From IMG/VR virus record IMGVR_UViG_3300010885_076238, positions 140,312 to 204,311 of that record: DNA of 64,000 nt; one strand, given 5' to 3'. Positions 1,590-26,314 of this stretch are shown here, piece by piece. The position numbers and the translations under genes were made by a program. The notes beneath the pieces were generated by a model. It saw nothing but the letters and a program-made list of their open reading frames with translations, ran no database searches and was not told the DNA's origin. How positions within the stretch are numbered: the first letter of the stretch is position 1; the number at the start of each line of letters is the position of its first letter.

Positions 1590-1656
1590 AAGTTTTCGGA
1601 ACAAACACCTGATGTTTATAGGCTACCAATAAATAAAAATTATTCTATTTCGTTAT

Positions 1657-2139
1657 ATGATTATGAGCGGCGTAGCAGATATTGAGTATGTGGAATTTGT
1701 CGGAGTTTTAGCCAAGGGAATAGGCAAGAAGCATAAGCGTGATATAGTTTTGTCTTGCGATCTTACGGGTCTGTTGAATCGCCAAGGAATAAGCGGCGGA
1801 AGCTGTTATCAAATTGTCACCAATGACAAAAAATTAATTCAAAAATCACGGGAAACTCTATCGGATTGTTGGATCGACAAAGACTTCAAGAAAAATTTAC
1901 GATCCAACATCAAGAACCACCTCCCAGAGAAACTTTATAATTATCTGGTAATGAGGAGCTTGGATGAAGAAGCCAATCTAAAAGATTTGCTAAATTATAG
2001 TGGTTGGGAAGTTTTAGAGTTGTTGCTGGAGACTGTTAGTCACGAAAGCGATTTCCGCAAATTCTTCGTCAAGATAAGCAAGGATAATTTAGAAATAATT
2101 CCTGCCGATGGTCAAGACAAAGTTAGCATTTCTTGGTAA
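1657..2139 (+). CDS. Hypothetical protein
   Basis: ORF after box + promoter. Confidence 0.6.
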   Translation: MIMSGVADIEYVEFVGVLAKGIGKKHKRDIVLSCDLTGLLNRQGISGGSCYQIVTNDKKLIQKSRETLSDCWIDKDFKKNLRSNIKNHLPEKLYNYLVMRSLDEEANLKDLLNYSGWEVLELLLETVSHESDFRKFFVKISKDNLEIIPADGQDKVSISW

Positions 2140-2141
2140 TT

Positions 2142-2429
2142 ATGCGATTATTAATTAGAAATCCCTACCGTATTAAAAATAATTTCAAGAACCTGTTTTG
2201 CAGGTATTGCCATATTTTTGGTCATAAATATTTTGAGTTCGAAATACTAAGGGATAATTATTATTTATTTGAAGCCGAAGCTAAGTGGACAACCAAACGA
2301 GATCATGCAGGAATTAAAATAATAATTGGAATTTTTGGTTATGCCATTGGAGCAACCATTTACGATAATCGACATTGGGACACTAAAAAAAATTGTTGGA
2401 TTGAATCGCCGCTGGTAAAACCAAAGTAG
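2142..2429 (+). CDS. Hypothetical protein
   Basis: ORF coupled to the upstream gene. Confidence 0.55.
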   Translation: MRLLIRNPYRIKNNFKNLFCRYCHIFGHKYFEFEILRDNYYLFEAEAKWTTKRDHAGIKIIIGIFGYAIGATIYDNRHWDTKKNCWIESPLVKPK

Positions 2430-2594
2430 ACTCGGCGGGCCATAAACCCCCTAATGCGTACCTGAGCAGATCGCCTTCGTGGTGGATGGTGATACAGGTG
2501 CATTACAAAAGCCGAAATGTACCTAGTTGTCTGGTAATCAGTAGGGCTAAACCCCGAATGCCAGTCCCAAAAGGACAAGGGACAACCGGCGATT
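2404..2594 (+). ncRNA. Unassigned multi-stem structured RNA candidate
   Basis: Closing stem aatcgccg/cggcgatt; internal stems tcggc/gccga, taatgc..acctg/caggt.gcatta, gttgtc/gacaac, gtcc/ggac. Confidence 0.55.
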
Positions 2595-2640
2595 TTTTCT
2601 CTTGAAAATTAAAAATTTAACGCTATAATAATCATGTGAC

Positions 2641-2713
2641 GGCCCCATCTTCTAGAGGCCTAGGAAAGCGGACTTTCACTCCGCTAACATGGGTTCGAAT
2701 CCCATTGGGGTCA
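2641..2713 (+). tRNA. tRNA-Glu(TTC)
   Basis: Cloverleaf; anticodon arm GCGGA-CTTTCAC-TCCGC; GGTTCGAATCC T-arm; TTGAAA-N16-TATAAT promoter at 2602-2629; no encoded CCA. Confidence 0.95.
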
Positions 2714-2725
2714 CTATAATTCATC

Positions 2726-2986
2726 ATGCTCAATCACGAAGGCAAAGTTTTCAATCCTTACTCTTTCAAAGAGCTTACTGGTTGGGAATTAGAGATTGTT
2801 GCTTTTTTAGATGATCAATATGATGCCAAAGCCAAGGATTATTTACTTGGAGACTTGAGTTGGGCAGATTACGTTCAGTCTAAAGAGCAAATCATATCGG
2901 ACTTTTTTACAAAAAGGTACGGTAAAATTTATCTCGACCGTCTGCCTGATAATTTGAAAAATAAAATATTGGCTTATTCGTTATGA
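2726..2986 (+). CDS. Hypothetical protein, ...NKILAYSL C-terminal family
   Basis: C-terminus shared with the next two genes. Confidence 0.65.
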   Translation: MLNHEGKVFNPYSFKELTGWELEIVAFLDDQYDAKAKDYLLGDLSWADYVQSKEQIISDFFTKRYGKIYLDRLPDNLKNKILAYSL

Positions 2987-2990
2987 AACT

Positions 2991-3200
2991 ATGAAATCCG
3001 ATATTGATCTTTTTTTGAAGCCAGTTTGTGAAGAATATAACAAAAACCAAAGTGAAATGTCATTAAAATTAATTTTGGATCTGGTCACTTGTTTGCCAAA
3101 CAAAAAAGAACCGATATTTGATCCAAAGTTTGTTTTTCAACTTATTCATAAAGAATTGCACGAAGAACTAAAAAATAAAATATTGGCTTATTCGTTATGA
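2991..3200 (+). CDS. Hypothetical protein, ...NKILAYSL family
   Basis: Same C-terminus. Confidence 0.6.
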   Translation: MKSDIDLFLKPVCEEYNKNQSEMSLKLILDLVTCLPNKKEPIFDPKFVFQLIHKELHEELKNKILAYSL

Positions 3201-3532
3201 AATATGAAACAAGTACGAACATTAGAGACTGGCTGCCTACTTGGCTTAAGTATGACAAAGTAGAAAATATAAAATTCTATAACGGAATTCCAGCAGTAGA
3301 ATTTGTGAATGAACTTCTTGATTGGGTAGATAATTCCAAGCTGGGCGATCTTAGAAAGAAAAAATACACACACTTCATCATATATCATGCAGTTCAAGCC
3401 CTAACCAGAGAAGTGAAAAATCTCCAGATAGCTTATAAAGAATTAGTTGATTACATTAATTGGCTAAGTAAGAAGCTTAAGAAACCTCTTCCCGAAAATG
3501 CTCGTAATCAAGTAATCGCATATAGCCTGTAG
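3197..3532 (+). CDS. Hypothetical protein, ...NQVIAYSL family
   Basis: Related C-terminus LPENARNQVIAYSL. Confidence 0.65.
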   Translation: MKYETSTNIRDWLPTWLKYDKVENIKFYNGIPAVEFVNELLDWVDNSKLGDLRKKKYTHFIIYHAVQALTREVKNLQIAYKELVDYINWLSKKLKKPLPENARNQVIAYSL

Positions 3533-3708
3533 TCATGTTATACTGTGTAACATGATTGAATTCATATTTTCTTGTTTTTGTATTATTATTTGCGGAATTT
3601 CTGGCTATTTAATTGGCGAATTTATTAAATTAAACACCTGATGTTTATCTGAGTCTGACCTGTCCGCTAATATACAAAAATAATAAAAAAGCCAATTCGT
3701 TATGAATT

Positions 3709-3969
3709 ATGGCAAATACTTCCGTTCTTGAAGAGTTGAAGAAGTTCATTCCCTACGCTGTGCAAAACAGTGTTAGAAGGAAAGAGCGCCAAGGATCTGA
3801 GCAGTGGATGAAAGAGTTTGACGAGCAATTAATTAATATGTATTTGACCGGAGTGAAGAAGCGTAAGAGCGATAAGGCTCTATGCGAATATGCCAAGTTG
3901 ATTGCTACTGCAAATGGCGTTGAACTTCCTGACAACATTAAATATTTTCTAATTTTATTGAACATATAA
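3709..3969 (+). CDS. Hypothetical protein
   Basis: ORF after promoter; LPDNIK C-terminal motif. Confidence 0.6.
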   Translation: MANTSVLEELKKFIPYAVQNSVRRKERQGSEQWMKEFDEQLINMYLTGVKKRKSDKALCEYAKLIATANGVELPDNIKYFLILLNI

Positions 3970-4002
3970 AATAAAAATTAGTGTCGTTCGTTATGACATT
4001 AT

Positions 4003-4075
4003 GGGGCGTTCGTCTAACGGTCAAAGACGCCAGTCTTATTAACTGGACATGGGTGTTCGATTCACTCACGCCCTA
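4003..4075 (+). tRNA. tRNA-Ile(TAT)-like with pyrimidine at position 37
   Basis: Acceptor GGGGCGT/ACGCCCT, D-stem GTCT/AGAC, anticodon arm CCAGT-CTTATTA-ACTGG, T-arm GGGTG-TTCGATT-CACTC. Confidence 0.8.
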
Positions 4076-4089
4076 CTAGGAGATTTACT

Positions 4090-4386
4090 ATGTGTGAAGA
4101 TTGCGAAAAGAAGTGGGCTGAAAGCATCTTTGAAGACGATGAGTTTCGTGGCAAGATTCTTGATGACTTTGAAATCCAACACTTTTGTGATGGGACATTC
4201 AGATTCAACAGCGTTATTGCAACTGACTTTGCAAAATTTCTAAAGGAACAAGGAGACGAACACGGTCAGTGGGAAGAAGATTCTTCTGAAGAAGAAAAGA
4301 TCGAATCGGCTACTGGCGTTGTTCATCGTTTGTTGGACATAGTCGGAGAAAGCCAGCAGCATCTTGCTAAATTTTCTTTGAATTAA
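4090..4386 (+). CDS. Acidic hypothetical protein
   Basis: AGGAG RBS; D/E-rich. Confidence 0.65.
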   Translation: MCEDCEKKWAESIFEDDEFRGKILDDFEIQHFCDGTFRFNSVIATDFAKFLKEQGDEHGQWEEDSSEEEKIESATGVVHRLLDIVGESQQHLAKFSLN

Positions 4387-4470
4387 ATTGCAAAAGGCTG
4401 GCTGGTTTTGTTGCAAAAGGCCGTATAAAATAAAAAGAAAATAATTTCGTTATGGTCTTAGAGGTGAAAT

Positions 4471-6189
4471 ATGGCGGATAGTGCGATTCTAAACAGATAC
4501 GATGGGCCTTGTTGTTCTTGTGGCAATTTTGTGCCATCTTCTGGAACTGAGCAAGGCTATGCCGTAAAGGAAAGCGGTCGTTGGAATCGTTACTGCAAAC
4601 TGTGCAGTCCGATCAAGCTAAAGACTGACCGCAAGCTTACAAAAGATGGTCGAATCTATATGCCATTCGACCGATCCGCTCTTGATATACTCAGGAGTGT
4701 TCCTGGTGCTTGGTTTGACCGTCAAGAAGTTTGTTGGCATGTGAGTTTGAAAGAGGGGGATCGTGCTCGTCTTTTGGAAATCGCTGCTGCTCTTGAATTG
4801 GAAGTAGACCCAGAACTCCAGAATATTGAGTTGTCTCAGCAATCTATCGATGCCGCTGACAGTGGTCTTTATCCATTTCAGGTTCATGGCGTCGATTGGC
4901 TGAGTAAGGGTTCCCATCGTCTTCTAGGAGACGATATGGGTTTGGGCAAGACTGTTCAAACCATCATGGCTCTTCCCAAAGATGCAGCAGCCATTGTTGT
5001 TGCACCTGCCAGCGTAAAATACAATTGGAAGAAAGAAGTAGAAAAGTGGAGGCCTGATCTGGAGGTTGCAATCATCCCTAATGAGAAGGGATTTAGGTTG
5101 CCTAGATTTGGCGAGGTTGTAATTTGCAATTATGAGACGCTCCCAGAATATCTGGAGCCTAAGAAGATTACTCCTACTTCTAAGAGTTGGGAAGTCGCCG
5201 TGACTTGGCCATCGTCAGAGATGGCTAAACATTCTAAGAATATCACCCTGATCGTTGACGAGGCGCAAAAAGTAAAAAACTATAAGACTAAACGATCCAA
5301 GCGTATCAAAGGCTTGAGCATGAGTGCCAAAAATATTTGGGCATTGACCGGCACTCCGTTGGAAAATCGCCCAGAAGATTTGTTCGGAATTCTTGAATCT
5401 CTTCAAATGCAGATGAAAGTATTCGGTGGATGGGGCAAGTTTGTCAAGTATATGAACGGCAACAAAAACAGATGGGGCGGATATGAATGGGGCAAGCCTA
5501 GTCCTATCGTTCCTGAGTTGCTCCGTCGTGTTATGCTTCGACGCAAACGCGAAGATGTCCTCCCAGACCTTCCGTCCAAAACTTACTCATATGTAAAGGT
5601 TGATCTTCCTAAGCATTTGAAGAAGTATATGGATGATCTCTGGGCCAGATATGAAGGCACTATCAGAGAAAAGAATCTTCCGCCGTTCGAAGAGTTCTCT
5701 AAAATTCGTGCCGATCTCGCAGCATCCAGAATTGACGCTGTCATTGAGCTAGTAGAGGAGCATGAGGAGGACGAAATTCCTCTTGTTGTATTTTGTTCGC
5801 ATCTTGAACCGTTGAATAAATTGGCGGAACGTGATGGGTGGAAGAAGATTACTGGAGATATTTCGCCTATCGAACGTCAAAAGATTGTCGATGAATTTCA
5901 GTCTGGGAAACTCAAGGGAGTTGCCGTCAGCATCAAAGCCGGTGGTGTCGGTATTACTTTGACTAAAGCATGGAAAGCAATCTTCGTTGACCTTGATTGG
6001 GTTCCGGGCGCAAACCAGCAAGCCGAAGACAGAATCTGCCGTATCGGTCAAGAATCAAATAAAATTGAAATCGTTCGAATGGTGAGCGATCACGCTCTCG
6101 ATATCCACGTTCTTGATCTAATCGATTGGAAGATGCGTATCATCGAACAGTCGGTTGACGCTAGTGTGACAAGTGTAAAAAAAAAGTAG
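4471..6189 (+). CDS. SNF2-family (SMARCAL1/HARP-like) helicase with N-terminal Cys cluster
   Basis: LLGDDMGLGKT, IVDEAQ, LTGTPLEN, QAEDRICRIGQ motifs. Confidence 0.92.
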   Translation: MADSAILNRYDGPCCSCGNFVPSSGTEQGYAVKESGRWNRYCKLCSPIKLKTDRKLTKDGRIYMPFDRSALDILRSVPGAWFDRQEVCWHVSLKEGDRARLLEIAAALELEVDPELQNIELSQQSIDAADSGLYPFQVHGVDWLSKGSHRLLGDDMGLGKTVQTIMALPKDAAAIVVAPASVKYNWKKEVEKWRPDLEVAIIPNEKGFRLPRFGEVVICNYETLPEYLEPKKITPTSKSWEVAVTWPSSEMAKHSKNITLIVDEAQKVKNYKTKRSKRIKGLSMSAKNIWALTGTPLENRPEDLFGILESLQMQMKVFGGWGKFVKYMNGNKNRWGGYEWGKPSPIVPELLRRVMLRRKREDVLPDLPSKTYSYVKVDLPKHLKKYMDDLWARYEGTIREKNLPPFEEFSKIRADLAASRIDAVIELVEEHEEDEIPLVVFCSHLEPLNKLAERDGWKKITGDISPIERQKIVDEFQSGKLKGVAVSIKAGGVGITLTKAWKAIFVDLDWVPGANQQAEDRICRIGQESNKIEIVRMVSDHALDIHVLDLIDWKMRIIEQSVDASVTSVKKK

Positions 6190-6625
6190 TAGTAGATAAA
6201 AAAGAACCAGAGCTAGATGCTAAGACGTTACGAGAATTAGACGAACAATATTCAAAAGAAAAATCAGATAGAAAGAATCTCCAAGAAACAATAAATTTCA
6301 TGAAGTCTCTTCTAGATGACGATGACGAATGAATGCCTTGCACAAATTTTAATTACTAAAGTCCAACTTAAGAATAATTTTTAATTTACTTAATTTGGGC
6401 GTTAGTAATTAATAATTTATATGACGAATACCTGATGTTTATTAACTGATTTTTCTTTTCGAAAATAAGTCAAGTTTACGCAAACCTTTGTGGCATAAGG
6501 ACTTACGACAAAAAACTTTAACTTATTCATCCTAAGTCCTTATGTGACAGTAGTTTACGTCAAATCAAAGATTGCAAAAATAAAAATATATATTGATCGT
6601 TATCTGGGAACAAGGAGAAAATTTT

Positions 6626-7012
6626 ATGGGCTTGGACATGTACGCTTACGCTGTTGACCCCAAGGAATGTGAGAATTTTGATGAATTCTCGTGCAAATTC
6701 AAAGGCGAATACAAGCCAGATGAAATTTATTACTGGCGCAAACATCATGATTTGCATGGATGGATGGAAAATCTGTACCGTAGCAAGGGCGGTCTTGAGG
6801 AGTTCAACTGCCAGAAGGTGATGCTGACTGTGGATGATTTGAATGAGCTTGAGAAGGCACTTATCTCTAAAGGATTGCCTAGCACCACAGGATTTTTCTT
6901 CGGAAATAATCCTCCTGATGAAGAAACTTTGAACGAAGACCTTCTTTTTGTTGCTAAGGCCAGAAAAGTAATAGAAGAAGGAAATGTTGTATACTACGAC
7001 AGTTGGTGGTAA
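6626..7012 (+). CDS. Conserved phage hypothetical protein (MGLDMY...WRK...YDSWW type)
   Basis: AAGGAG RBS before ATG 6626; familiar phage motif pattern. Confidence 0.75.
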   Translation: MGLDMYAYAVDPKECENFDEFSCKFKGEYKPDEIYYWRKHHDLHGWMENLYRSKGGLEEFNCQKVMLTVDDLNELEKALISKGLPSTTGFFFGNNPPDEETLNEDLLFVAKARKVIEEGNVVYYDSWW

Positions 7013-7043
7013 AATAATAAAAAATAAGGAGCGTTATAAGATT

Positions 7044-7625
7044 ATGGACACTAAACTTTTTGATAGTCTGACCCGAGGTTGTTTTGAAGAACGATTTTTC
7101 GCCTATATGAAGGCTGTTGGTCTTGATCTAGTAACTGTCGCCTACAGTGGTGGTGGCGATAGTGGAGGAATGGACTATATGGAGTTCGATCCAGCCGTAA
7201 ACGACAAGATCAAGGACGGGATCAAGAATGATTTAGAAGAGCAACTTTGCAACCCAATTTATAGTAAGCATGGAGGCTTTGCCGATGGCGGCGGGTATCA
7301 TGTAAATGGTCAAGTGGTTTATGACGCTAATACTCAAACTGTCAACATTAGCGGAACAGACCATATAACCACCTACACTTATGAAGAAGGGCTAGAAGAC
7401 GAAGAGGCGGATGAAGAGACCAGACAAGAAGACTGGGAAGAGTGCGTTTATAGTAGGAGCGCAAAGCATCCCAAAAGTAAGGAATCCGACTACCTGTTTG
7501 CCTATCTATACGCCAGAGATTTTCTTGATAAGAAGTTGCCGGAAGACCTTCATAATAAAATGATGACCGAAGCGTCCATCAACGAAGATGAACACGCTAT
7601 AAAATATATGATAGAAATAAAATGA
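7044..7625 (+). CDS. DUF6878-like protein
   Basis: YSGGGDSG motif. Confidence 0.55.
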   Translation: MDTKLFDSLTRGCFEERFFAYMKAVGLDLVTVAYSGGGDSGGMDYMEFDPAVNDKIKDGIKNDLEEQLCNPIYSKHGGFADGGGYHVNGQVVYDANTQTVNISGTDHITTYTYEEGLEDEEADEETRQEDWEECVYSRSAKHPKSKESDYLFAYLYARDFLDKKLPEDLHNKMMTEASINEDEHAIKYMIEIK

Positions 7626-7834
7626 TGCGATATAACATTGACACTACGAATGGCGACCTTGTTCAAATCGACCTTGCTGGTGATTCTTGGATTGCCTCTG
7701 ACGACACTTCAATCCTTGTCACTTTGATAAAGTTCAACACTGACCCTTCTCAAAGTCTTTCTCTTTCCGTTACTAAGAAGGACTTGGAAAAAATAGTTTC
7801 TAATTTAAATATCATCCTGCCTAATAATAATTAA
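7622..7834 (+). CDS. Hypothetical protein
   Basis: ATGA overlap with the upstream gene. Confidence 0.55.
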   Translation: MMRYNIDTTNGDLVQIDLAGDSWIASDDTSILVTLIKFNTDPSQSLSLSVTKKDLEKIVSNLNIILPNNN

Positions 7835-7853
7835 TCTAAAGAGTTATGTAAAT

Positions 7854-8084
7854 ATGAGATATCGAGATCAAATTAAAGAAGCCCGTAAGTGGTCGTATGT
7901 TGAAGCCGGATTCAGCGAGGAACTTCCTCCTGATGAGCGACAGGTCGCTCTTGAACGAGCGAATGCTTTGTACGAAGAAGCTGTCAAAGAGTTAGAAGAA
8001 CTTGAGGCAGAAGAAGACGAGAGCTATAGTAAGTACGAACGCAAGTATATCAAGACTAAGAAACGTTGGGATAATGCAGCATGA
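7854..8084 (+). CDS. Hypothetical charged protein
   Basis: ORF ending in -NAA. Confidence 0.6.
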   Translation: MRYRDQIKEARKWSYVEAGFSEELPPDERQVALERANALYEEAVKELEELEAEEDESYSKYERKYIKTKKRWDNAA

Positions 8085-8308
8085 TCTGCACAAATTCCAA
8101 GGAAACAAAATAAAATAAAAAATAATTTGTTTCCTCTACGGAATTAGGCTCCTATAATTAATATTTTATAGGGTCGAAACACCTGATGTTTATTTTTGGT
8201 GCAGCACTTTCTACTACTTATAGAGAGGCGGTCAAAAATAATTTTCCTCTTCGACCGTTATGCAGTATGGCAGCGATTGAGACTGCCAAGCTCAACTGGG
8301 AACATGAA

Positions 8309-8551
8309 ATGTATCTGGTTCTGATGATTAGCAACAACCGCGTCACCTACGCAAAGGCGTTTGACCAGTGGGATTCGGCTGTGCTGTGTGCTGACAACGT
8401 GGTTATGGATATTGCCGGGGTTTCAAACGATATGCTCGATTGGGAGAACGGCGATTACCGCACGGTCTACGAGCATACAAACGGCACTACAGTGACGATT
8501 GAGACGCTGGACGGGCCGGGAGCTAAGAGTTCGGAAATTCTTGGTTCGTAA
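8309..8551 (+). CDS. Hypothetical cassette protein
   Basis: Start re-assigned downstream of promoter and leader hairpin. Confidence 0.6.
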   Translation: MYLVLMISNNRVTYAKAFDQWDSAVLCADNVVMDIAGVSNDMLDWENGDYRTVYEHTNGTTVTIETLDGPGAKSSEILGS

Positions 8552-8626
8552 GAAATAATTTTCGATCTAGTTCGTTATCCCAATGTGGCAGCGATTGAGA
8601 CTGCCGCAGCAACCGGAGCAAAAAAG

Positions 8627-8872
8627 ATGAAGAAAAATGTTTGGTTGAGTTCTGACCCCGCAAACACCGAGGGCGGAGACATGGGCTTCTGGTGGAATCG
8701 TGGTTGCAACAGCATTGCCGCTGTCTCTGTTGATGAAACCGGGCTGCGTTTCGATGGCAGCGACTTCACGGTCGTCATCGACAACCCAGGCCAGACCAAC
8801 GAGAGCGTGAAAGTGCTGGTCAACGACGTGGTCGTCTTCGGTTCTGTCAAGACCAAGGCCAAGGCGAGTTGA
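8627..8872 (+). CDS. Hypothetical cassette protein
   Basis: GGAG RBS after the leader hairpin. Confidence 0.6.
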   Translation: MKKNVWLSSDPANTEGGDMGFWWNRGCNSIAAVSVDETGLRFDGSDFTVVIDNPGQTNESVKVLVNDVVVFGSVKTKAKAS

Positions 8873-8878
8873 GTCCTA

Positions 8879-8910
8879 CCCTCCCCTGCCCATCAAGGGC
8901 AGGGGAGGGA
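8879..8910 (+). terminator. GC-rich hairpin between cassettes (no U-tract)
   Basis: ccctcccctgccc-atcaa-gggcaggggaggg. Confidence 0.55.
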
Positions 8911-10014: not shown

Positions 10015-10025
10015 GTAAACACCTA

Positions 10026-19268: not shown

Positions 19269-19324
19269 TTTTTTCGACTCTCATTCGTTATACAAATGTA
19301 GCCACCACCCCAAGCAGGAAAAAA

Positions 19325-19528
19325 ATGACTATCACAGAAGTCATCACGCCCGGCCCAGGCGGATTCAAATTTCTCAACATGACGAACGAGAAGTTCGACT
19401 CGTTCACCGCAGACGAAATCATTGCCGCTGCGGAAGCGGCCGGTCTGTGGACATACTACGAACTGGACGACGACGGGAAGCTGACCGGCTTGGCGATCAC
19501 CACGAAAGAAAGAGAGCCAAACGGATAG
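19325..19528 (+). CDS. Small hypothetical protein
   Basis: Promoter + AGGA. Confidence 0.6.
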   Translation: MTITEVITPGPGGFKFLNMTNEKFDSFTADEIIAAAEAAGLWTYYELDDDGKLTGLAITTKEREPNG

Positions 19529-19763
19529 CGGGCTTTGGCCCAATGCTCTAACACCTAATGTTTATAATCAACAGTGAGTTGCTTGCCAAAACCAAAGGAG
19601 CCGGACATGGAAACTTTTGAGCAGTGGTGCAAGAGGATGCAAGAAGAACACGATCAATGGATTTCAAGTCCCGAAGGACAAATCTGGATCAAGGGCTAAA
19701 AATTATTTTCGGTTTGATTCGTTATCAAGTATGGCCGATCATTCAACACCTAAGGAACAAGTC

Positions 19764-20078
19764 ATGAAAGCCAAAGAAGTGCAGATTGGACAGGAGTTCT
19801 ACACCAACTACGCGAGCATGGAACACTGCAAGCCGCTGTCTAACGTTCATCGTTGGAAAATGATCGCTCCAGAGCATCGGTTGGCGCAGCTTGTGCTTGT
19901 CACCGGGGACGTTTGCGATCACACTCGCATCATCGATGAAAAGGAAGAAGTGTTCGCCACAGCCGGTGAAGCTTGGCAAGATTGTGCGACTCAACTCAAC
20001 GCGATCATCGAAAAGATTCGTGAAGCCGTCAAGGATTGCGAGTCCAAAGTTCCCCGCCAGTGCAAGGAATCCGCGTGA
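19764..20078 (+). CDS. Hypothetical protein
   Basis: Promoter + AAGGA; start re-assigned. Confidence 0.6.
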   Translation: MKAKEVQIGQEFYTNYASMEHCKPLSNVHRWKMIAPEHRLAQLVLVTGDVCDHTRIIDEKEEVFATAGEAWQDCATQLNAIIEKIREAVKDCESKVPRQCKESA

Positions 20079-20137
20079 AAAAGGGGGCTTGGGAAACCAA
20101 GTCCCCAATAATTAACACCAAATGTCTATTATAGAGT

Positions 20138-20422
20138 ATGAGACTATTTATTGATGACATCAGAACTCCATCCGAAGACTACATCGTTCTCCGGTCTTCT
20201 GAGGATGCCATTCAATTCATAAAGCAAAATGGCTGGCCTGAGTTCATCAGTTTTGACCACGATCTTGGCGGCGACGATACCACTATGGTCTTTCTCAAAA
20301 GGCTTGTAAACGAAGTATGGGACGGCAAAACCATGCCGCCAGACTATATCGTTCATAGTGCCAACCCAATTGGATCGAAGAACATCGTGAGTTTCATGGA
20401 AAGCTGGAAGAAGTCAATCTAA
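20138..20422 (+). CDS. Cyclic-phosphate-processing receiver-like domain protein
   Basis: LFIDDIR...ISFDHDLG...VHSANPIG signature. Confidence 0.8.
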   Translation: MRLFIDDIRTPSEDYIVLRSSEDAIQFIKQNGWPEFISFDHDLGGDDTTMVFLKRLVNEVWDGKTMPPDYIVHSANPIGSKNIVSFMESWKKSI

Positions 20423-20496
20423 AAAATTTTTTTTACTTTCATTCGTTATACCAATATGGCAGCAATTGAGACTGCCGGATTACTAGGATTGCTCTA

Positions 20497-20574
20497 ATGT
20501 TTGGACTCGTTTCTATGATTTTGTTTAGCGTCGGAACTATTGGATTTTTCTACGTCACTAAGGAGGGCAACTAA
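20497..20574 (+). CDS. Putative 25-aa membrane peptide
   Basis: After leader hairpin + AGGA; MFGLVSMILFSVGTIGFFYVTKEGN. Confidence 0.45.
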   Translation: MFGLVSMILFSVGTIGFFYVTKEGN

Positions 20575-20726
20575 TGTTTATCGTAATTGAGCAGAAGGAA
20601 GACGGCACGACTCAGATTCTTTCGCCCGTAATCAACGACCAGAAAGAAGCAGAAGTAGAGGCTGCTTGGATTTCCCACCTGAACGGTTGGAGTTGCACAG
20701 TAAAGCAAGTGGATCAAGCCGCTTGA
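20574..20726 (+). CDS. Small hypothetical protein (50 aa)
   Basis: AAGGAGG RBS; TAATG coupling; ends in -QAA. Confidence 0.55.
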   Translation: MFIVIEQKEDGTTQILSPVINDQKEAEVEAAWISHLNGWSCTVKQVDQAA

Positions 20727-20858
20727 AACAATCGGCAGTAAACCTGCCACCCAACCCAAAAGGTTGGGCCATTAGCAAATACCTAATGTTTATTGTTGAA
20801 TCGAACCTGATAAAAATAATTTTCGATCTAGTTCGTTATAGATTTAGGAGGACGTTTT

Positions 20859-21071
20859 ATGACTAAGCCCGTTGAAATCTCAACCAAGGAAATGTGGGAA
20901 CTCTCAGCAGTGGGAGCCTGCATTCTTCTAGCTGTTCAAGAGATGGAAGAAGATGCTGTCGGCAGGCAAAAGGTGATCGAAGCGGGAAACCGTTTGTTCG
21001 ATCTCATGGGCAAAATTGGAGAACGAGATGATTGGTCATCCAGAAGCCCAAAAGGAGAGGAAAAAGTATGA
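20859..21071 (+). CDS. Hypothetical protein
   Basis: Promoter + AGGAGG. Confidence 0.6.
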   Translation: MTKPVEISTKEMWELSAVGACILLAVQEMEEDAVGRQKVIEAGNRLFDLMGKIGERDDWSSRSPKGEEKV

Positions 21072-21234
21072 AAAAAACTGTCGGAGCAACCAAGGCTCAC
21101 GCATCATGCGGATATTGCAAACACTTGCGCAAGTTCGGAAAGCGACTTGCCAATAAGGCTTCTCGCAAACACGGAAATAATTTTCGATTCAATGCGTTAT
21201 CAAATATAGAGAATCCCAACCCCGGAGAATAATC

Positions 21235-21465
21235 ATGTTCAAGAAGAAAACCGATGGTCGATTCCGTGTCGAGCTGAAGTATAAGAACGGCAGCGAAGCA
21301 TTCATGGTCAGCAACGACTACCAGCAAATCTGCCGCCTGTACGAGCTTGCCAGAACTCCCATTTGCGAAAATTTCACACAGTCGATCTACGAAGTGATCT
21401 TGTTCGACGGCGATAAGCCCCTTGCAAACTGGACTAACTCAGCCGCATTAGTCAAAGTGGCTTGA
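21235..21465 (+). CDS. Hypothetical protein
   Basis: Promoter + GGAG. Confidence 0.6.
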   Translation: MFKKKTDGRFRVELKYKNGSEAFMVSNDYQQICRLYELARTPICENFTQSIYEVILFDGDKPLANWTNSAALVKVA

Positions 21466-21473
21466 CAATCCTA

Positions 21474-21550
21474 GGCGATTCTGGGTAGGGCCGGTCTCAT
21501 GAGCCGGATTGGGTAGCACCCCCCGCGTGGTTCGATTCCACGACTCGCCA
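21474..21550 (+). tRNA. Atypical D-arm-less tRNA-like RNA, anticodon CAT
   Basis: Acceptor GGCGATT/ACTCGCC-A, anticodon arm CCGGT-CTCATGA-GCCGG, T-arm CGTGG-TTCGATT-CCACG; only 10 nt in place of the D-arm. Confidence 0.65.
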
Positions 21551-21585
21551 TTTAGAATGCGGTAAAATGCAACAAGGAGCAAACC

Positions 21586-21825
21586 ATGAATACTGAATTT
21601 TATGTGGGCGAACACCGTGGTATCTGGGTAGGCCCAGTCATCCGAAATAAACAGACGAATCATCCTGTGGCATTCGTCGCAGCCGGATCAGAACACTTTT
21701 CCGAAATATTATCCCTAGCACCAGAAATGCTTGAAGCACTACGGAAAATCAGGAATAACTCAGACAACGCGGAAGTCAACAAAATCGCATCAGAAATCCT
21801 ACTCAAGGCAACCAAACACGCCTAA
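21586..21825 (+). CDS. Hypothetical protein (APEMLEAL motif)
   Basis: AAGGAG RBS; common phage motif. Confidence 0.65.
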   Translation: MNTEFYVGEHRGIWVGPVIRNKQTNHPVAFVAAGSEHFSEILSLAPEMLEALRKIRNNSDNAEVNKIASEILLKATKHA

Positions 21826-22011
21826 TCGTCAACACCTAATGTTTATTTCCCGAACGGGACAATTCAGACAAAAATCAGGCAATTTATAATAATTATTCCC
21901 GCTCGGGAAAGTTAGGTAATCTGTGCAAGCCCATAAAAGAAAATAAAAAATCCAAGGCCCGATTGACGATAGATAAGGTACGGGACAGAAAACCATTCAA
22001 AGGAGTGAATC

Positions 22012-22278
22012 ATGTTGGCTTGGATCGGAATCGCAATAACCGCCGTTGGAATGATTTTTAGTAGCTATGAGTTCGTGAAAAAAAATCCAGAACTCTTGCC
22101 CAAAGTTCAAAACGTACAACTGCTGGCCCATCGTCAACGTCAATCAGCGTTCATGTACAGTCAAGTAAATTTGGCCTATGATGTTGTGAACGGAAAACAT
22201 TGGTTTCAACACCCAGACGGTCAGTGGAGAGAATTCCCACCAAAACCCTCTCAAGTCGATATGCAAAACAGCCGATAA
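22012..22278 (+). CDS. Membrane-anchored hypothetical protein
   Basis: N-terminal hydrophobic helix; AAGGAG. Confidence 0.6.
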   Translation: MLAWIGIAITAVGMIFSSYEFVKKNPELLPKVQNVQLLAHRQRQSAFMYSQVNLAYDVVNGKHWFQHPDGQWREFPPKPSQVDMQNSR

Positions 22279-22902
22279 ATAAAATAAGGAAAGGAATCCA
22301 AAATGAAAAAAATCAACTGGAACCAAATCGTCAACGCTCTTATTCTTGTCAAAATAGGACAAGACTTAGGAACCAACTCGCAACTTACCCAATCCATCCA
22401 TCATATCATCGACGTTATTGCTACGTTCGCTAATGCCTTTGTAAGAATATAAAATAATTTCTCGATCAGTTCGTTATACAATAGTGGCCGTCCCATTCTC
22501 AGGAGAGCAAACATGAACACTGACACCAACTGGACTTACGAGCGCGAGGGAGCCAAAGAGATGATCGCAAGGCTCGAAGAAGAAATTCAGAATTCGACCT
22601 CCAAGCAGGATCGAATCAACAAACAGGAAGAAATACAAAGACTCCAATCGTAAAGAGTCAAAAAATAATTTTCAATCCCGTTCGTTATACAATAGTGGTC
22701 AACTAAAGGTGCTGACTGAAAGTGACACACGGCGGACAAGGTGGCCGACCGCAGGATCAGCACCACTCTAAAGGATCAAAAATGTATCTGACTCTCAATG
22801 ATTGGATGATGCTCGTTGGACTGATTTCTTTCGCAGGATTCTGTTCCTACACTGCCCACGAAATTCAAGGTGCAATCCACAACTACTTACATGGAGAATA
22901 TA

Positions 22903-23247
22903 ATGATTTTTGAAGTTGAAATGCTCGCGTTCGGAAAACCAGGAGAAGTTCGCAAGGTCAATGTTCCCGATGAGGCTCTAACTCGCGCAAAAGAAGATAC
23001 AGACAATATTCTTGAAGCCGCGTTTTATTACGGCCAAAACGATTTCCAGCCGCAAAACCACCCGTCAGTAAGTGCTGGCGATGTGATCCGCTGGAAAGAA
23101 GAAAACTATCTGGTTGCTGGTATGGGTTTCAAAAAGCTGACCGATGAACAACTAAATGATTATCGATCTCTCGACCAAAACGATAAGTTCATCGGAAGAT
23201 GCCAAATTGAAATAGGCGAACCAGTAGTAGGACGCAGAAACAAGTAA
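22903..23247 (+). CDS. YodL-like protein
   Basis: PSVSAGDVI...YLVAGMGFKKL resembles the YodL signature. Confidence 0.6.
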   Translation: MIFEVEMLAFGKPGEVRKVNVPDEALTRAKEDTDNILEAAFYYGQNDFQPQNHPSVSAGDVIRWKEENYLVAGMGFKKLTDEQLNDYRSLDQNDKFIGRCQIEIGEPVVGRRNK

Positions 23248-23442
23248 CCTGCACAATTCCATCAAACCATCAAAGCCCTAATAAATAATAAATATCGCTT
23301 ACGAAAGTGATATTTATAGGGCTTTATCTAACACCTAATGTTTATAAAACATCGCTAGTCGAAAAAAATAATTTTCGATCCAGTGCGTTATGCCAATGTG
23401 GGCAGCAATTGAGACTGCCCCCGTTTTCAGGAGGTTTGAATC

Positions 23443-23652
23443 ATGGGTGACGAAGATTCCTTTCTCGATTCGCGTTGGGAAGAAATTTGCGAGTATGAAG
23501 ACTCGTACGAGCAAGAGGATTGCTTCGATGACTTCGACGATGAAGATGATGAATACGATTGCTTCAGCGAAGACGACAACGACGACTTTGAAGACGACTT
23601 CGCTGACGACAACTACGACGACTACGACGACTTCTACGAGGAAGCCGCGTGA
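23443..23652 (+). CDS. Extremely acidic small protein (DNA-mimic candidate)
   Basis: More than half D/E with spaced F/Y; promoter, leader hairpin, AGGAGG. Confidence 0.7.
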   Translation: MGDEDSFLDSRWEEICEYEDSYEQEDCFDDFDDEDDEYDCFSEDDNDDFEDDFADDNYDDYDDFYEEAA

Positions 23653-23797
23653 AAATAGGGGGCTTGGGAAACCAAGCTTCCCCCAACTATCAACACCTAA
23701 TGTTTATAATGCCAACCCGCCGGAAACTTCTCGAAGAAAAATAATTTTCCATTCAAATCGTTATAAATCATCGGCCCAAAACCCTGAGGATCAAATC

Positions 23798-24343
23798 ATG
23801 AGCTACGAAAACGCCCCCGCCACCATCATGCTCGCGACCCACTGCTGCTGCTGCGGTCGCCCACTGGTCGATGCTATCTCTGTTGAGATGGGTATCGGCC
23901 CCGATTGCCGTCAAGGTCGCACCGATGGCATTTCCAAAGAACAGCAAGAAATCTGCAACAAACTCACCCATGCCGCCGCTCTTGCCGCGCAGGAAGGTCA
24001 AGTCGAGAAGGTTCGCGCGATTGCCGCCGAAATTGCCGCTCTAGGTCTGACTGAATTGGCCGATAAGGTTCAGCACCGTTTCGTCAACGCTGAAAGATTG
24101 GCAAAGATCAATATCATTCAGACCGGCGACCGTCTGACCGTTACAACCCCGTGGAAACGTAGCAGCGACTTTGTTGCCGCATGGAGAACCATTCCCGGCA
24201 GACGATATGGCGGGGCCGGTAAGAACATCATCCCCCTTAGCAGCAAGGGTGAGTTGTGGAATCTGCTACAGAAGTTCTTCCCCGGCCAATTCGGCAAGGG
24301 GCCAAAGGGACTGTTCAGAGTCCCTAAGAACGAGGCGGCTTGA
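23798..24343 (+). CDS. DUF6011-like Zn-ribbon protein
   Basis: CCCCGRPLVD..S...GIGPDC; start re-assigned after the promoter at 23737. Confidence 0.75.
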   Translation: MSYENAPATIMLATHCCCCGRPLVDAISVEMGIGPDCRQGRTDGISKEQQEICNKLTHAAALAAQEGQVEKVRAIAAEIAALGLTELADKVQHRFVNAERLAKINIIQTGDRLTVTTPWKRSSDFVAAWRTIPGRRYGGAGKNIIPLSSKGELWNLLQKFFPGQFGKGPKGLFRVPKNEAA

Positions 24344-24567
24344 CTGCCTGCACAAATTATATGCCCCCGAAATCCAAATGGAGAGTAGGGGTCGCGTTAT
24401 ACAGAAAAAACTTTAGAAATAAATATTAATACCTAATGTTTATTTTTATTCGCGCCGGTAGCCGGTAGCCGGTCGAGTTCGCCGGTAGTAAAAAAATAAT
24501 TTCCGATCCGGTTCGTTATACCAATATGGCCGCGATTGAGACGGCCAGCCAATCGGGAGGATGGGAC

Positions 24568-24858
24568 ATGGCGACTTGGATCAACGGCGACCCGGTGAAT
24601 GTTGTTGCAGGCATGATCAGGAGCCGCTGGTTGCTTCTGCCCGCAACTTGGTTTGAATCAGGCATGGGCGTCAAAGTGGACGACGAACGCAAATTCGTCC
24701 ATGTGATCGACCGACGCGGAAAGCCCGTGGGCAATCCCATAAAGTTTTGGGATGATGCTCCGGCCGGTGGCGGATCAAAAGAAGATGCCATCAACGAGTG
24801 CAAAGCATTCGGAGAGACATACGCACAAATTTTCCGCCCCCGAAATCCACAAGGATAG
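24568..24858 (+). CDS. Hypothetical cassette protein
   Basis: Promoter, leader hairpin, GGAGG. Confidence 0.6.
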   Translation: MATWINGDPVNVVAGMIRSRWLLLPATWFESGMGVKVDDERKFVHVIDRRGKPVGNPIKFWDDAPAGGGSKEDAINECKAFGETYAQIFRPRNPQG

Positions 24859-25014
24859 TAGGGGTCGCGTTATACAGAAACGGCAGAAAATATTTGGCCT
24901 GCCACTTAACACCTAACGTTTATTTTTGATGGTGGGCAGCAAAAAATAATTTTCGGTTTGGTGCGTTATCTAGTATGGCCGCAATTGAGACGGCCAGCCA
25001 ATCGGGAGCTTGTC

Positions 25015-25209
25015 ATGATCGCCATCGTCATCGTCACCGCCGCGTACGTCGCTTTCGGCATCGCGGGGTACTCGTACGTCAACCGTTGGATTTGCCACGG
25101 CCTTGACGACGGCAATGAGTCTGGAACTGGCCTGTCGTGCTTGCACATTCTCAACCCCATCATGGTGGCGGTTGGAGCGAGAATAATGCTCGACAAGCTG
25201 TCCTCCTAG
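25015..25209 (+). CDS. Small membrane protein, copy 2
   Basis: Paralog of 18608 in a duplicated cassette. Confidence 0.7.
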   Translation: MIAIVIVTAAYVAFGIAGYSYVNRWICHGLDDGNESGTGLSCLHILNPIMVAVGARIMLDKLSS

Positions 25210-25343
25210 CGGAGGGCAGCCGCCCAACCAAACACCTAATGTTTATAAGTGAGCGAACGCGCGGCTCCCGAATAATTTTCAATTTCATTCGTTATCCAGT
25301 ATCGCCGCACTTGTGACGGCAGGCCGACCATAGGAACCAACCC

Positions 25344-25649
25344 ATGACCACCACTCGCGAAACGCTTCTGGCCGAGTTTGCCTCCGTCTACAGCCGCACA
25401 GGCTGGAGGGTCGCCGCTTCTCTCGACGGCATGACCGTGGATCAGTTGCAGACCACGCTCGACGGTCTGTACGAAGCCATCAGTGAGGAAAGGGAAAAGA
25501 TGGACGCTTGGTTCGCAAGACAGAACGAGGATGCTGAAATGTCTGCCCGTGAGTGGGAGCAGTTGCAGGCAAAAGCCGATGCTGAGGCTGCTGCCGAAGC
25601 TGAGTGGTCGAAGTGGCAACACCACTACGACAGGCTGGTAGGGGTGTGA
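25344..25649 (+). CDS. Hypothetical acidic helical protein
   Basis: Promoter, variant leader hairpin, AGGA. Confidence 0.65.
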   Translation: MTTTRETLLAEFASVYSRTGWRVAASLDGMTVDQLQTTLDGLYEAISEEREKMDAWFARQNEDAEMSAREWEQLQAKADAEAAAEAEWSKWQHHYDRLVGV

Positions 25650-25778
25650 CCCGCCTCATATCGAAACACCTAATGTTTATAATGGGCCTGAGTTAGCCGA
25701 AAATAATCCGCCCACCCAACCGTTATCAGTGTAGCGACCGCATATGTGACGGTCTCGCCTACCCTTGGAGTTCCTGCC

Positions 25779-26207
25779 ATGTACACCACTCCCTCCTTCG
25801 TGAAGAACGTTCTCCCCGCTGGCAAGATCCCCGGCATGGAAGCCCACTACAGCGATCTGTCCGACTTGAGCATCACCATCCCCTTCGCACTCATGGGATG
25901 GGACGATGGCCTCGACTGTGGCTACCAAGACTCCCCGCCCACTGATTACGTTGTAGGGGCTTTCGAGAATCGTGATGAGGCTGAGGATCAGCTTGCTTCC
26001 TGTGTGCAAAACAACCCAGCCGGTATCTATTGGATCGTGGAGAGCTATCAGGAGCCGCTGTACAGCTTCAATAGCGTCAGCTGGGACGGAATCAATAGGG
26101 ATGCCTATCTGTCCATGTCGCTCACCCGCGAGGATGTCATACGCCTTGAGAGCAGGCTGGTAAGGGAGAAGACCCAGAGCGACCATACAGTTGTGCGACT
26201 GGCCTAA
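25779..26207 (+). CDS. Hypothetical protein
   Basis: Promoter, variant leader hairpin, GGAG. Confidence 0.6.
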   Translation: MYTTPSFVKNVLPAGKIPGMEAHYSDLSDLSITIPFALMGWDDGLDCGYQDSPPTDYVVGAFENRDEAEDQLASCVQNNPAGIYWIVESYQEPLYSFNSVSWDGINRDAYLSMSLTREDVIRLESRLVREKTQSDHTVVRLA

Positions 26208-26314
26208 TGCACAGCACGACTGCACAGAACCAAGGCATCCTGCTGCCAGAACGGCAAGCAGGGCCGCAATCAAACACCTACGGTCTATTATATAATCGAA
26301 CACCCAATGTTTAT

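What the first reader, a model, noticed from the sequence alone, without database searches (positions are those of the whole stretch)
1603..26314. Polarised array of 24 17-bp boxes punctuating single-gene cassettes
Seen: AAACACCTRATGTTTAT (arms AAACA/TGTTT around an asymmetric CCTRA core) occurs 24 times, always on the same strand. It sits almost always just after a gene or hairpin and before the next promoter. Copies get denser toward 26.3 kb and are absent beyond it. Duplicated cassettes end exactly at the box. Inference: either an operator for a dimeric regulator (the three HTH paralogs are candidates), a directional protein-loading site, or a crossover site that lets promoter-hairpin-ORF-box units be shuffled like an integron-independent cassette array. 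A plain operator does not predict a strictly oriented core.
Basis: partly seen in the sequence, partly recalled or inferred. Interest (0 to 1): 0.85.

Follow-up and report, generated by a model that had tools for sequence, protein, structure and literature searches.

The report
Polar end-of-unit boxes in phage gene array
A 16-17 base one-way signal marks the ends of transcription units in a long array of small, mostly unknown genes in a 204-kb freshwater phage. It most likely stops or insulates transcription, it is private to this phage lineage, and it resembles known phage "stoperators" and promoter/stem-loop cassettes without being a member of either.

Summary
In the window there are 24 boxes (AACACCTRATGTTTAT), all on the + strand, against a chance expectation of about 1. 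Five more lie upstream, giving 29 boxes over 44 kb of a 204-kb phage contig and none elsewhere.

The array also holds about 75 copies of a non-sigma70 promoter (AAAATAAT-N12-TCGTTAT). Nearly all are on the + strand. The box sits at the 3' end of blocks of 1-5 genes, often just after a stem-loop that lacks a T-run. It usually lies before the next promoter, and it is doubled at the end of the array.

The proposed AAACA/TGTTT arms show no covariation, so the site is asymmetric.

A sister phage (SNF2 69%, DUF932 85% amino-acid identity) has the same architecture. Its box (GGTTAGCATTTATCC) and its promoter core are different. DNA homology between the two phages stops at ORF borders, and gene order is shuffled.

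Best reading: a polar stop or insulator for transcription, read by a lineage-specific factor, forming PeSL-like modules together with the stem-loop and promoter. This is stoperator-like in logic. RNA processing and an upstream promoter element remain live rivals. A dimeric operator, an attC-like site and a Chi-like site are poorly supported. Function is inferred, not shown.

The parts
1..26314 (+). Window part of a one-directional cassette array. The whole array runs from record 122521 to 166625, which is window -17790 to 26314. ORFs have 0.40-0.61 GC in a phage of about 0.32 GC.
1603..1619 (+). box, 0 mismatches, G-type
3632..3648 (+). box, 0 mismatches, G-type
6426..6442 (+). box, 2 mismatches; 237 nt after the SNF2 helicase gene
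8177..8193 (+). box, 0 mismatches; stem-loop 1 nt upstream
9755..9771 (+). box, variant GTCTAT; 5 nt after a stop codon
10017..10033 (+). box, variant GTCTAT; followed directly by a gene with no promoter
12199..12215 (+). box, 1 mismatch
13608..13624 (+). box, 3 mismatches; starts 2 nt after the 3' end of tRNA-Leu
15235..15251 (+). box, 1 mismatch
16223..16239 (+). box, 1 mismatch; follows a -28 kcal/mol stem-loop; stays with the upstream gene end, 97 nt before the next promoter
17352..17368 (+). box, 0 mismatches; 14 nt after a stop codon and 103 nt before the next promoter
18817..18833 (+). box, A-type; first of 13 consecutive A-type boxes
19549..19565 (+). box, A-type
20113..20129 (+). box, 3 mismatches, variant GTCTAT; followed by the cREC_REC gene, which has no promoter
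20777..20793 (+). box, A-type
21830..21846 (+). box, A-type; 5 nt after a stop codon; a sigma70-like site follows at 21863-21890
23329..23345 (+). box, A-type; follows a stem-loop with z = -6.8
23691..23707 (+). box, A-type; its stem-loop plus box is a repeat of the one at 20065-20132
24427..24443 (+). box, A-type, 2 mismatches
24907..24923 (+). box, A-type, 2 mismatches
25230..25246 (+). box, A-type, 0 mismatches
25664..25680 (+). box, A-type, 0 mismatches
26272..26288 (+). first box of the terminal double box (variant GTCTAT)
26298..26314 (+). second box of the terminal double box; the array and the GC-rich zone end here
1630..25726 (+). 41 copies in the window of the phage-specific promoter motif AAAATAAT-N12-TCGTTAT, with a G about 9 nt after it (about 75 copies counting upstream DNA). 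The 5' end of tRNA-Ile lies exactly at that G.
8268..24995 (+). 11 copies of a stem-loop (GGCMGC-RATTGAGAC-KGCC) that starts at the predicted transcript 5' end
16305..16331 (-). one of only two minus-strand copies of the promoter motif; its transcript would cross box 16223 in antisense
17440..17466 (-). second minus-strand promoter copy, with the same conserved 45-nt leader; its transcript would cross box 17352 in antisense
26375..26436 (+). GC-rich stem-loop with a T-run about 70 nt after the last box, conserved in the sister phage; a canonical terminator that closes the array

Best explanation
The box is the 3' boundary mark of transcription blocks. It lies in a >=44-kb one-directional array of promoter-ORF cassettes, mostly unknown genes and probably host-takeover or counter-defence genes, in a 204-kb tailed freshwater phage.

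Each block holds 1-5 genes. Many genes have their own copy of a phage-specific promoter, so transcripts are nested and share a 3' end. The block ends with a stem-loop that usually has no U-run, followed within 0-13 nt by the box.

The most likely mechanism is that the box is read only in the direction of transcription and stops or insulates elongation.

Stem-loop, box, AT-rich tract and promoter together form a composite module like the PeSLs of T4-type phages. Its many copies also give the homology by which cassettes are duplicated and reshuffled.

Shown here: the existence, strandedness, positions, gradient and lineage specificity of the box; the co-variation of box and promoter between two phages; and the shuffled gene order. 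Inferred: that the box stops transcription, that a protein reads it, and that recombination uses these modules.
For: - Orientation. 29 of 29 boxes share the orientation of the genes.
- Intergenic position. All boxes are intergenic. Some lie 3-14 nt after a stop codon or 2 nt after tRNA-Leu.
- Stem-loops. Upstream stem-loops are enriched and lie 0-13 nt from the box.
- Long spacers. Where the spacer is long, the box stays with the upstream gene end rather than the promoter (16223 and 17352).
- Array end. The array closes with a double box (26272, 26298). The sister phage closes its array with an inverted pair, and the same GC drop follows.
- No canonical terminators. Hairpin-plus-T-run terminators are not enriched, and essentially none lies in + strand intergenic DNA of the array, so the box is the only conserved candidate stop signal.
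- Promoter after the box. Well-matched boxes are nearly always followed by a promoter before the next gene. The two clearest promoterless genes follow degenerate GTCTAT boxes (10017, 20113).
- No box in a 5' UTR. In the window region no box lies between a promoter motif and its ORF.
- Sister phage. It has the same layout with a different, equally invariant box (19 copies on +) and a different promoter core. This points to a co-evolving phage-encoded reader rather than host RNA polymerase alone.
- Private to the lineage. Multiple box-plus-promoter copies occur in only this one phage genotype across IMG/VR and 241 million metagenome records.
- Module turnover. Paralogous modules exist, G-type and A-type boxes are spatially clustered (p = 0.0015), and gene order is shuffled between the phages.
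Against: - No transcript data exist, so termination is not shown.
- About 60% of boxes have no strong stem-loop upstream.
- A few boxes are followed by ORFs with no recognisable promoter (10017, 20113, window -7702, possibly 19549).
- In the sister phage several boxes follow canonical hairpin-plus-T-run terminators, which makes a second stop signal look redundant. There the box lies close to the promoter, 34-58 nt from its core.
- In the window, box-to-promoter distances cluster at about 10-bp steps (Rayleigh R = 0.62, nominal p = 0.001). That would fit an upstream promoter element.
- No reader protein was identified. The winged-helix paralogs are 68% identical to their sister-phage homologue, and the putative recognition helix looks conserved by eye while the boxes differ completely.
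- The polymerase or sigma factor that uses the promoter is unknown.
Confidence: 0.4

Rival explanations
1. RNA processing site. The array is transcribed into long read-through RNAs, and a sequence-specific endoribonuclease (phage-encoded, or a host enzyme guided by a phage factor) cuts at the box. The upstream mRNA is then trimmed back to its protective 3' stem-loop, and tRNAs are released.
For: It shares the strand and intergenic logic of the best explanation. Stem-loops without U-runs look like 3' stabilisers rather than terminators. The box starts 2 nt after the CCA-less tRNA-Leu, and the phage encodes a CCA-adding/poly(A) polymerase family enzyme. The model explains why genes with no promoter can follow a box (10017, 20113, 19549).
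Against: The box RNA has no conserved structure and matches no Rfam family. In the sister phage canonical terminators lie upstream of some boxes, so little RNA would contain them. The double and inverted boxes at the array ends fit a stop signal better. No nuclease candidate was found.
Confidence: 0.2
2. Upstream promoter element. The box is the binding site of a phage activator or modulator that acts on the promoter just downstream, from the same face of the helix.
For: 18 of 29 window boxes and 13 of 18 sister-phage boxes have a promoter within about 35-76 nt. Window distances fall at 36-39, 45-49, 55-57, 68 and 76 nt, with a periodicity peak at 10 bp. Box and promoter change together between the two phages.
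Against: Only about a quarter of the 75 promoters have a box, and promoters with and without one look alike. About 10 boxes have no promoter, including both at the array end. In long spacers the box stays with the upstream gene end. Phasing is not significant in the sister phage (p about 0.06-0.1). Spacer sequences are unrelated.
Confidence: 0.12
3. Dedicated recombination site. The box is the crossover point of a site-specific system that moves promoter-ORF-box cassettes, in the manner of integron attC sites.
For: There is one box per block end, all in one orientation, in an array of small ORFan genes. Gene order is shuffled between the two phages. One stem-loop-plus-box repeat ends 3 nt after the box.
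Against: No integrase or recombinase domain appeared in the Pfam hits listed for about 90 kb around the array. The box is 16 nt and not an imperfect palindrome. Cassettes carry their own promoters. Homology between the two phages ends at ORF borders, not at boxes. The largest internal duplication runs through a box. No polymorphism was seen in any population contig.
Confidence: 0.05
4. Ordinary operator for a dimeric helix-turn-helix regulator, for example one of the three winged-helix paralogs.
For: A weak dyad (AACA/TGTT) exists. Three paralogs with a winged-helix-like fold are encoded in the array.
Against: The dyad is 4-5 bp with no compensatory change. Orientation is strict. The box does not overlap promoter cores. 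The paralogs are 68% identical to their sister-phage homologue, with the putative recognition helix apparently conserved, while the box is entirely different.
Confidence: 0.03
5. Polar site for a DNA motor or nuclease (Chi-like or KOPS-like), or a selfish REP-like repeat with no role in expression.
For: Single orientation and a density gradient toward one boundary.
Against: 16 nt is far longer than known Chi or KOPS sites. The box differs between sister phages. It is strictly intergenic. No genome end lies at the boundary, because several independent assemblies run through it. It is not palindromic like REP elements.
Confidence: 0.05

Closest known systems
Stoperators of Cluster A mycobacteriophages (L5 gp71-type immunity repressor sites)
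   Same: There are more than 20 copies of an asymmetric short site in short intergenic spaces, with orientation tied to the direction of transcription. The L5 sites are proposed to halt elongation only in one orientation, and their sequence co-evolves with a phage protein (PMC9283540; PMC6550527 was listed but not read).
   Different: The box is 16 nt rather than 13. It is confined to 44 kb of a 204-kb genome instead of being spread genome-wide. No copy overlaps an early promoter as a true operator would. No repressor homologue or sign of lysogeny was found. The phage and its host lineage are unrelated to mycobacteriophages. Units between boxes have their own promoters, so the boxes cannot silence them.
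PeSLs (promoter-early stem-loop cassettes) of T4-type phages
   Same: Both are composite terminator/promoter modules with an AT-rich tract. They flank ORFans in a hyperplastic region. They are proposed to attenuate read-through and to mediate modular shuffling by homologous recombination (PMC2839356, PMC4122927).
   Different: The promoter here is not sigma70-like. The stem-loops are not conserved in sequence. An extra invariant 16-nt oriented box sits between stem-loop and promoter. No mini-circles or indel polymorphisms could be examined.
Class II (sequence-specific) pause/termination signal of T7-type RNA polymerases
   Same: Both are short, oriented, structure-independent sequences with a T-rich 3' part that would act on the elongating polymerase.
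   Different: The published core ATCTGTT, as recalled and used as a search term (the papers were not read), is not present. No single-subunit polymerase was seen in the roughly 110 kb examined. The promoter is bipartite, with two conserved blocks 12 nt apart, unlike T7-type promoters.
Integron attC sites
   Same: One site lies at the 3' end of each unit, all in one orientation, in an array of small genes.
   Different: attC sites are 57-141 bp imperfect palindromes recombined by an adjacent integrase, and integron cassettes lack promoters. None of this holds here.

Membership tests
Stoperator system (Cluster A mycobacteriophages) | Many copies of a short asymmetric site | tested here: met
   There are 29 copies. 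The dyad is not supported.
Stoperator system (Cluster A mycobacteriophages) | Sites in short intergenic spaces with orientation tied to the direction of transcription | tested here: met
   All 29 are intergenic and co-oriented with the genes. Only one gene direction is present in the array, so a flip with gene direction could not be seen, apart from the inverted copy at the end of the sister phage's array.
Stoperator system (Cluster A mycobacteriophages) | Sites spread across the genome, with some overlapping early promoters as operators | tested here: not met
   The boxes are confined to record 122.5-166.6 kb of 204 kb. None overlaps a promoter core.
Stoperator system (Cluster A mycobacteriophages) | Bound by a monomeric immunity repressor (HTH plus stoperator domain) that blocks elongation | not tested
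   No binding data exist and no homologue search was made. Only about 110 of 204 kb were read.
PeSL cassettes (T4-type phages) | Composite of a sigma70-like early promoter, an AT-rich upstream tract and a stem-loop | tested here: inconclusive
   An AT-rich tract, a promoter and often a stem-loop are present. The promoter lacks sigma70 -35/-10 hexamers, and sigma70-like sites are not enriched.
PeSL cassettes (T4-type phages) | Flank ORFans in a hyperplastic region | tested here: met
   Most array ORFs have no Pfam or PHROG match. Gene content and order differ from the sister phage.
PeSL cassettes (T4-type phages) | Recombination between copies gives indels between close relatives, and mini-circles | tested here: inconclusive
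   Internal module duplications exist and gene order is shuffled. All near relatives are 99.99-100% identical, so no breakpoints could be mapped.
Intrinsic (hairpin plus U-run) terminator | GC-rich stem followed at once by a T-run | tested here: not met
   15 sites were found against 17.4 expected, and essentially none in + strand intergenic DNA. The T-rich part of the box lies 10-25 nt from the stem.
Integron attC | Imperfect palindrome of 57-141 bp, an adjacent integrase, promoterless cassettes | tested here: not met
   no integrase domain in the Pfam hits listed
Palindromic operator of a dimeric regulator | Two-fold symmetric half-sites overlapping or next to a promoter core | tested here: not met
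Known RNA families (Rfam) | Match to a curated covariance model | tested here: not met
   Only tRNAs and a tmRNA were found.

The most novel reading that the evidence does not exclude
The box is the target of a phage-encoded sequence reader that acts as a one-way transcription roadblock, a stoperator-like system that arose independently in a jumbo freshwater phage. Box and promoter sets are replaced in concert between sister lineages. Together they form a plug-in frame that lets foreign GC-rich genes be captured, expressed and insulated one by one, giving an integrase-free cassette array.
Probability: 0.2. Interest if true: 0.75.

Novelty: new variant of a known kind. Interest (0 to 1): 0.5.

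Why it matters
If the box is a one-way stop signal read by a phage factor, it would be a second, independent case of the stoperator principle, outside actinobacteriophages and outside lysogeny control. It would also show how a large phage keeps dozens of independently promoted accessory genes insulated from each other and from the next module.

The pair of sister phages shows wholesale replacement of about 20-30 boxes and about 55-75 promoters while the ORFs are kept. That is a clear natural example of concerted evolution of regulatory punctuation, and a ready-made orthogonal promoter/stop pair for testing. It also extends the PeSL idea of regulatory cassettes as substrates for modular shuffling to a non-T4 phage.

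Tried and rejected
- Hairpin or palindrome reading of the box: there is no covariation.
- Canonical terminators and sigma70 promoters: not enriched.
- Known RNA families, including ribozymes: none, even below threshold.
- Near relatives in the INPHARED phage set: none.
- Box in other viral contigs: only single chance hits outside this contig.
- Box-plus-promoter scan of 241 million metagenome records: multiple copies only in this one genotype.
- Breakpoint mapping in population variants: all contigs are 99.99-100% identical, and the apparent gene differences were differences in gene calling.
- Helical phasing of box and promoter: nominally significant in the window, not in the sister phage, so not relied on.
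- Search for the polymerase or sigma factor that reads the promoter: walking 48 kb upstream found only proteins of unknown function, weak RepB/ParB-like paralogs and a ligase.
- Host or cargo origin through DUF932 in 185,579 genomes: one 3.7-kb contig from a MAG only.
- Winged-helix paralogs as the box reader: the fold is weakly supported, but the proteins are conserved between phages whose boxes differ.
- Chi-like, REP-like and attC-like readings: rejected on length, symmetry, lineage specificity and the lack of an enzyme.

Full report
**Observation.** Every copy is on the + strand, between 1603 and 26314. About 0.9 copies are expected by chance. Base composition changes sharply at the same boundary, from 0.44-0.54 GC before 26.3 kb to 0.30-0.34 after it. 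An alignment of all copies shows that the first base is free. The conserved motif is AACACCTRATGTTTAT, with seven invariant positions. The proposed arms AAACA/TGTTT show no compensatory change at all, pair no better than column shuffles, and the outer pair is unpaired in 13 of 29 copies. The site is therefore asymmetric.

**Where the window comes from.** The window is the last 64 kb (record 140312-204311) of a 204,311-bp JGI/IMG-VR contig from a lake metagenome. The element is a tailed phage. It has an open frame of more than 2,350 codons matching tape-measure proteins, a tmRNA, 11-12 tRNAs and a CCA-adding/poly(A) polymerase family enzyme. There is no near relative among 50,697 deposited phage genomes.

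**The array is larger than reported.** Walking upstream with exact-protein look-ups found five more + strand boxes, the first at window -17790. In total there are 29 boxes over 44 kb, all on one strand (p = 4e-9). Spacing shrinks from 2-5 kb to 0.3-0.7 kb toward 26.3 kb (Spearman -0.83). No box occurs in the 30 kb further upstream or in window 26.3-64 kb. Exact 16-mers in the whole contig lie only inside the array.

**A second, more frequent repeat.** The motif is AAAATAAT-N12-TCGTTAT, with a G about 9 nt later. It has 45 matches in the window against 1.0 expected by chance. 41 of them are on the + strand inside 1.6-25.7 kb. About 75 copies are found when the upstream DNA is included. I read it as a phage-specific promoter for three reasons:
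- It precedes almost every gene at a fixed distance from the ribosome-binding site.
- It does not fit sigma70 hexamers, and sigma70-like sites are not enriched.
- The mature 5' end of tRNA-Ile falls exactly 9 nt after TCGTTAT in this phage. In the sister phage tRNA-Ile, and by my reading tRNA-Leu(taa), start at the same spacing after GTTAT.

Eleven promoters are followed by a stem-loop that begins at the predicted first transcribed base.

**Position of the box.**
- It is always intergenic.
- It lies 3-100 nt after a stop codon, or 2 nt after tRNA-Leu.
- A stem-loop of <= -12 kcal/mol lies within 45 nt upstream in 38% of cases, against 12% for random windows. The gap between stem and box is 0-13 nt, and some stems are very strong (z -3 to -7).
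- These stems lack a T-run, and canonical terminators are not enriched.
- 18 of 29 boxes are followed by a promoter, but only about a quarter of promoters have a box. Many promoters abut the preceding stop codon.

The array therefore consists of blocks of 1-5 genes with internal promoters, each block closed by a box.

Several details favour a boundary mark over a promoter element:
- In long spacers the box stays with the upstream gene end (16223 and 17352, each about 100 nt from the next promoter).
- The array ends with two boxes 26 nt apart. A canonical hairpin-plus-T-run terminator, conserved in the sister phage, follows about 70 nt later.
- Well-matched boxes are nearly always followed by a promoter before the next gene. 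The clearest promoterless genes follow degenerate GTCTAT boxes (10017, 20113).

**Relatives.** The same genotype (99.99-100% identity) was assembled from several lake samples, so no structural variation is available. A box-plus-promoter pattern scanned over 241 million metagenome records occurs in multiple copies only in this genotype.

One true sister phage was found: IMGVR_UViG_3300032233_002826, 118.5 kb, with SNF2 helicase 69% and DUF932 protein 85% identical. It has the same architecture:
- about 55 + strand promoters;
- 19 + strand boxes that get denser toward the end;
- the same GC drop after the array;
- an inverted pair of boxes as the final element.

Its box is GGTTAGCATTTATCC, which shares only TTTAT with the window box. 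Its promoter core is TAGAATGTTAT instead of TCGTTAT. DNA homology between the two arrays is confined to ORFs. For DUF932 it runs from 3 nt before the start codon to 5 nt after the stop. About 28 genes are shared, at 31-86% identity, and several have moved relative to the SNF2 and DUF932 anchors.

More distant DUF932-carrying phages (61-70% identity) use sigma70-like promoters and other repeats of their own.

Inside the window phage, promoter modules and one stem-loop-plus-box module are duplicated. G-type boxes (CCTGATG) lie on the left and the last 13 boxes are all A-type (p = 0.0015). This suggests local spread of modules.

**Interpretation.** Strict co-orientation, position at block ends, doubling at the array end and the absence of canonical terminators all point to a one-way stop or insulator for transcription.

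This is the logic of stoperators: asymmetric, oriented, intergenic sites at which a phage repressor halts elongation in one orientation only (PMC9283540). Together with the stem-loop, the AT-rich tract and the promoter, the box forms a composite module close to the PeSLs of T4-type phages. PeSLs are thought to attenuate read-through and to serve as recombination substrates for ORFan shuffling (PMC2839356, PMC4122927). Membership in either family is not claimed, because defining features fail or could not be tested (see the membership table).

**Open rivals.** An RNA processing site explains the same geometry, and also the few promoterless genes that follow boxes. It fits less well with the terminators upstream of boxes in the sister phage. 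An upstream promoter element is suggested by distances clustering at about 10-bp steps in the window. That is not reproduced in the sister phage, and it leaves about 10 boxes unexplained. A dedicated recombination site, a dimeric operator and a Chi- or REP-like element are poorly supported.

They are 741-1010, 8960-9322 and 12985-13341. They fold weakly as winged-helix proteins. They are 68% identical to their sister-phage homologue, with the putative recognition helix apparently conserved, so they are unlikely readers of a box that differs completely.

**Cargo.** Identified products include an SNF2 helicase, DUF932, DUF6011, a cREC_REC domain protein and a weak 2H-phosphoesterase-like hit. 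Further upstream lie a MoxR-type AAA protein with a VWA partner, a CAP-domain protein, a ligase and DUF6915/DUF6900/DUF4314 proteins. Most ORFs have no match. From general knowledge of such gene sets, this fits an accessory host-takeover or counter-defence region. That is an inference.

**Verdict.** The feature is real, highly non-random and larger than reported. It is best described as a lineage-specific polar boundary signal inside PeSL-like regulatory cassettes. It is a new variant of known kinds, and its function is still inferred.

Noticed in passing
window 16305-16331 (-) and 17440-17466 (-): These are the only two minus-strand copies of the array promoter. Each is followed by a conserved 45-nt leader (85% identity over 128 nt between the copies). 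Their transcripts would run antisense across boxes 16223 and 17352 and into the upstream 3' stem-loops. They may be small antisense RNAs.
   Followed up: partly
window 1-26314 versus 26315-64000: ORFs in the array have 0.40-0.61 GC, rising toward the right end, while the rest of the phage has 0.30-0.34. The sister phage shows the same step. This could reflect foreign cargo, or early genes tuned to host codons while later genes rely on the phage's own tRNAs.
   Followed up: partly
window 3968-4003; L244 9529-9564 and 3229-3248: tRNA-Ile (both phages) and, in the sister phage, tRNA-Leu(taa) begin exactly 9 nt after the promoter core. The tRNA 5' end may therefore be made by initiation itself, without trimming of a leader.
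   Followed up: partly
window 2590-2640: A good sigma70-type promoter (TTGAAA-16-TATAAT) lies just before tRNA-Glu, so host-type promoters coexist with the phage-specific class. The sister phage has a similar one (TTGATA, 17-nt spacer, TATAAT) before box L244:2942.
   Followed up: no
window 26330-26560: The AT-rich spacer after the array holds three copies of a TTTTACAAAA(A)TT-like motif. A related motif (CTTTGTRGCAAAAATAAAAA) is repeated in the sister phage. It may be a regulatory or replication-related region for the next module, which starts with a NUDIX gene at 26601.
   Followed up: no
window 43110-46752 (-): A minus-strand cluster of 8 tRNAs plus a tmRNA (tag GTNSYAMAA). Rfam also calls a 136-nt tRNA match at 43909-44044 that ARAGORN does not report, possibly an interrupted tRNA. 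Methyltransferase/HtrL, glycosyltransferase-like and CCA-adding enzyme genes lie nearby.
   Followed up: no
window 56942-64000 (+): An open frame of more than 2,350 codons with tape-measure matches runs off the end of the window and contig, which implies a very long tail.
   Followed up: partly
window 27023-27745 and 27742-28410: Two adjacent paralogous genes (240 and 222 aa, about 80% DNA identity over 346 bp) of unknown function lie just after the array.
   Followed up: no
window 20138-20422 and 9364-9750: One protein has a cREC_REC (cyclic-phosphate processing receiver) domain, and another has a weak 2H-phosphoesterase-like hit. Both are candidate counter-defence genes against cyclic-nucleotide signalling.
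   Followed up: no
L391 11228-12148, L391 17927-18940, L237 2015-2965 (record 103-115 kb): Three paralogous proteins of 307-338 aa, each with a weak RepB/ParB-like match, are encoded upstream of the box array. They are possible DNA-binding proteins whose targets are unknown.
   Followed up: partly
L320 2600-14000; L325 8600-14600: More distant DUF932-carrying phages have a different + strand repeat of about 64 nt. It ends in AGTCAGCGAG and contains a CTAATCC/GGATTGG stem. Some copies are in tandem, and it matches no Rfam family. It may be another lineage-specific punctuation element.
   Followed up: partly
window 32568-33509 and 34114-36117 (-): A caspase-like peptidase (C14) gene and a 667-aa protein with an FGE-sulfatase-type domain lie in the AT-rich part of the window.
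   Followed up: no
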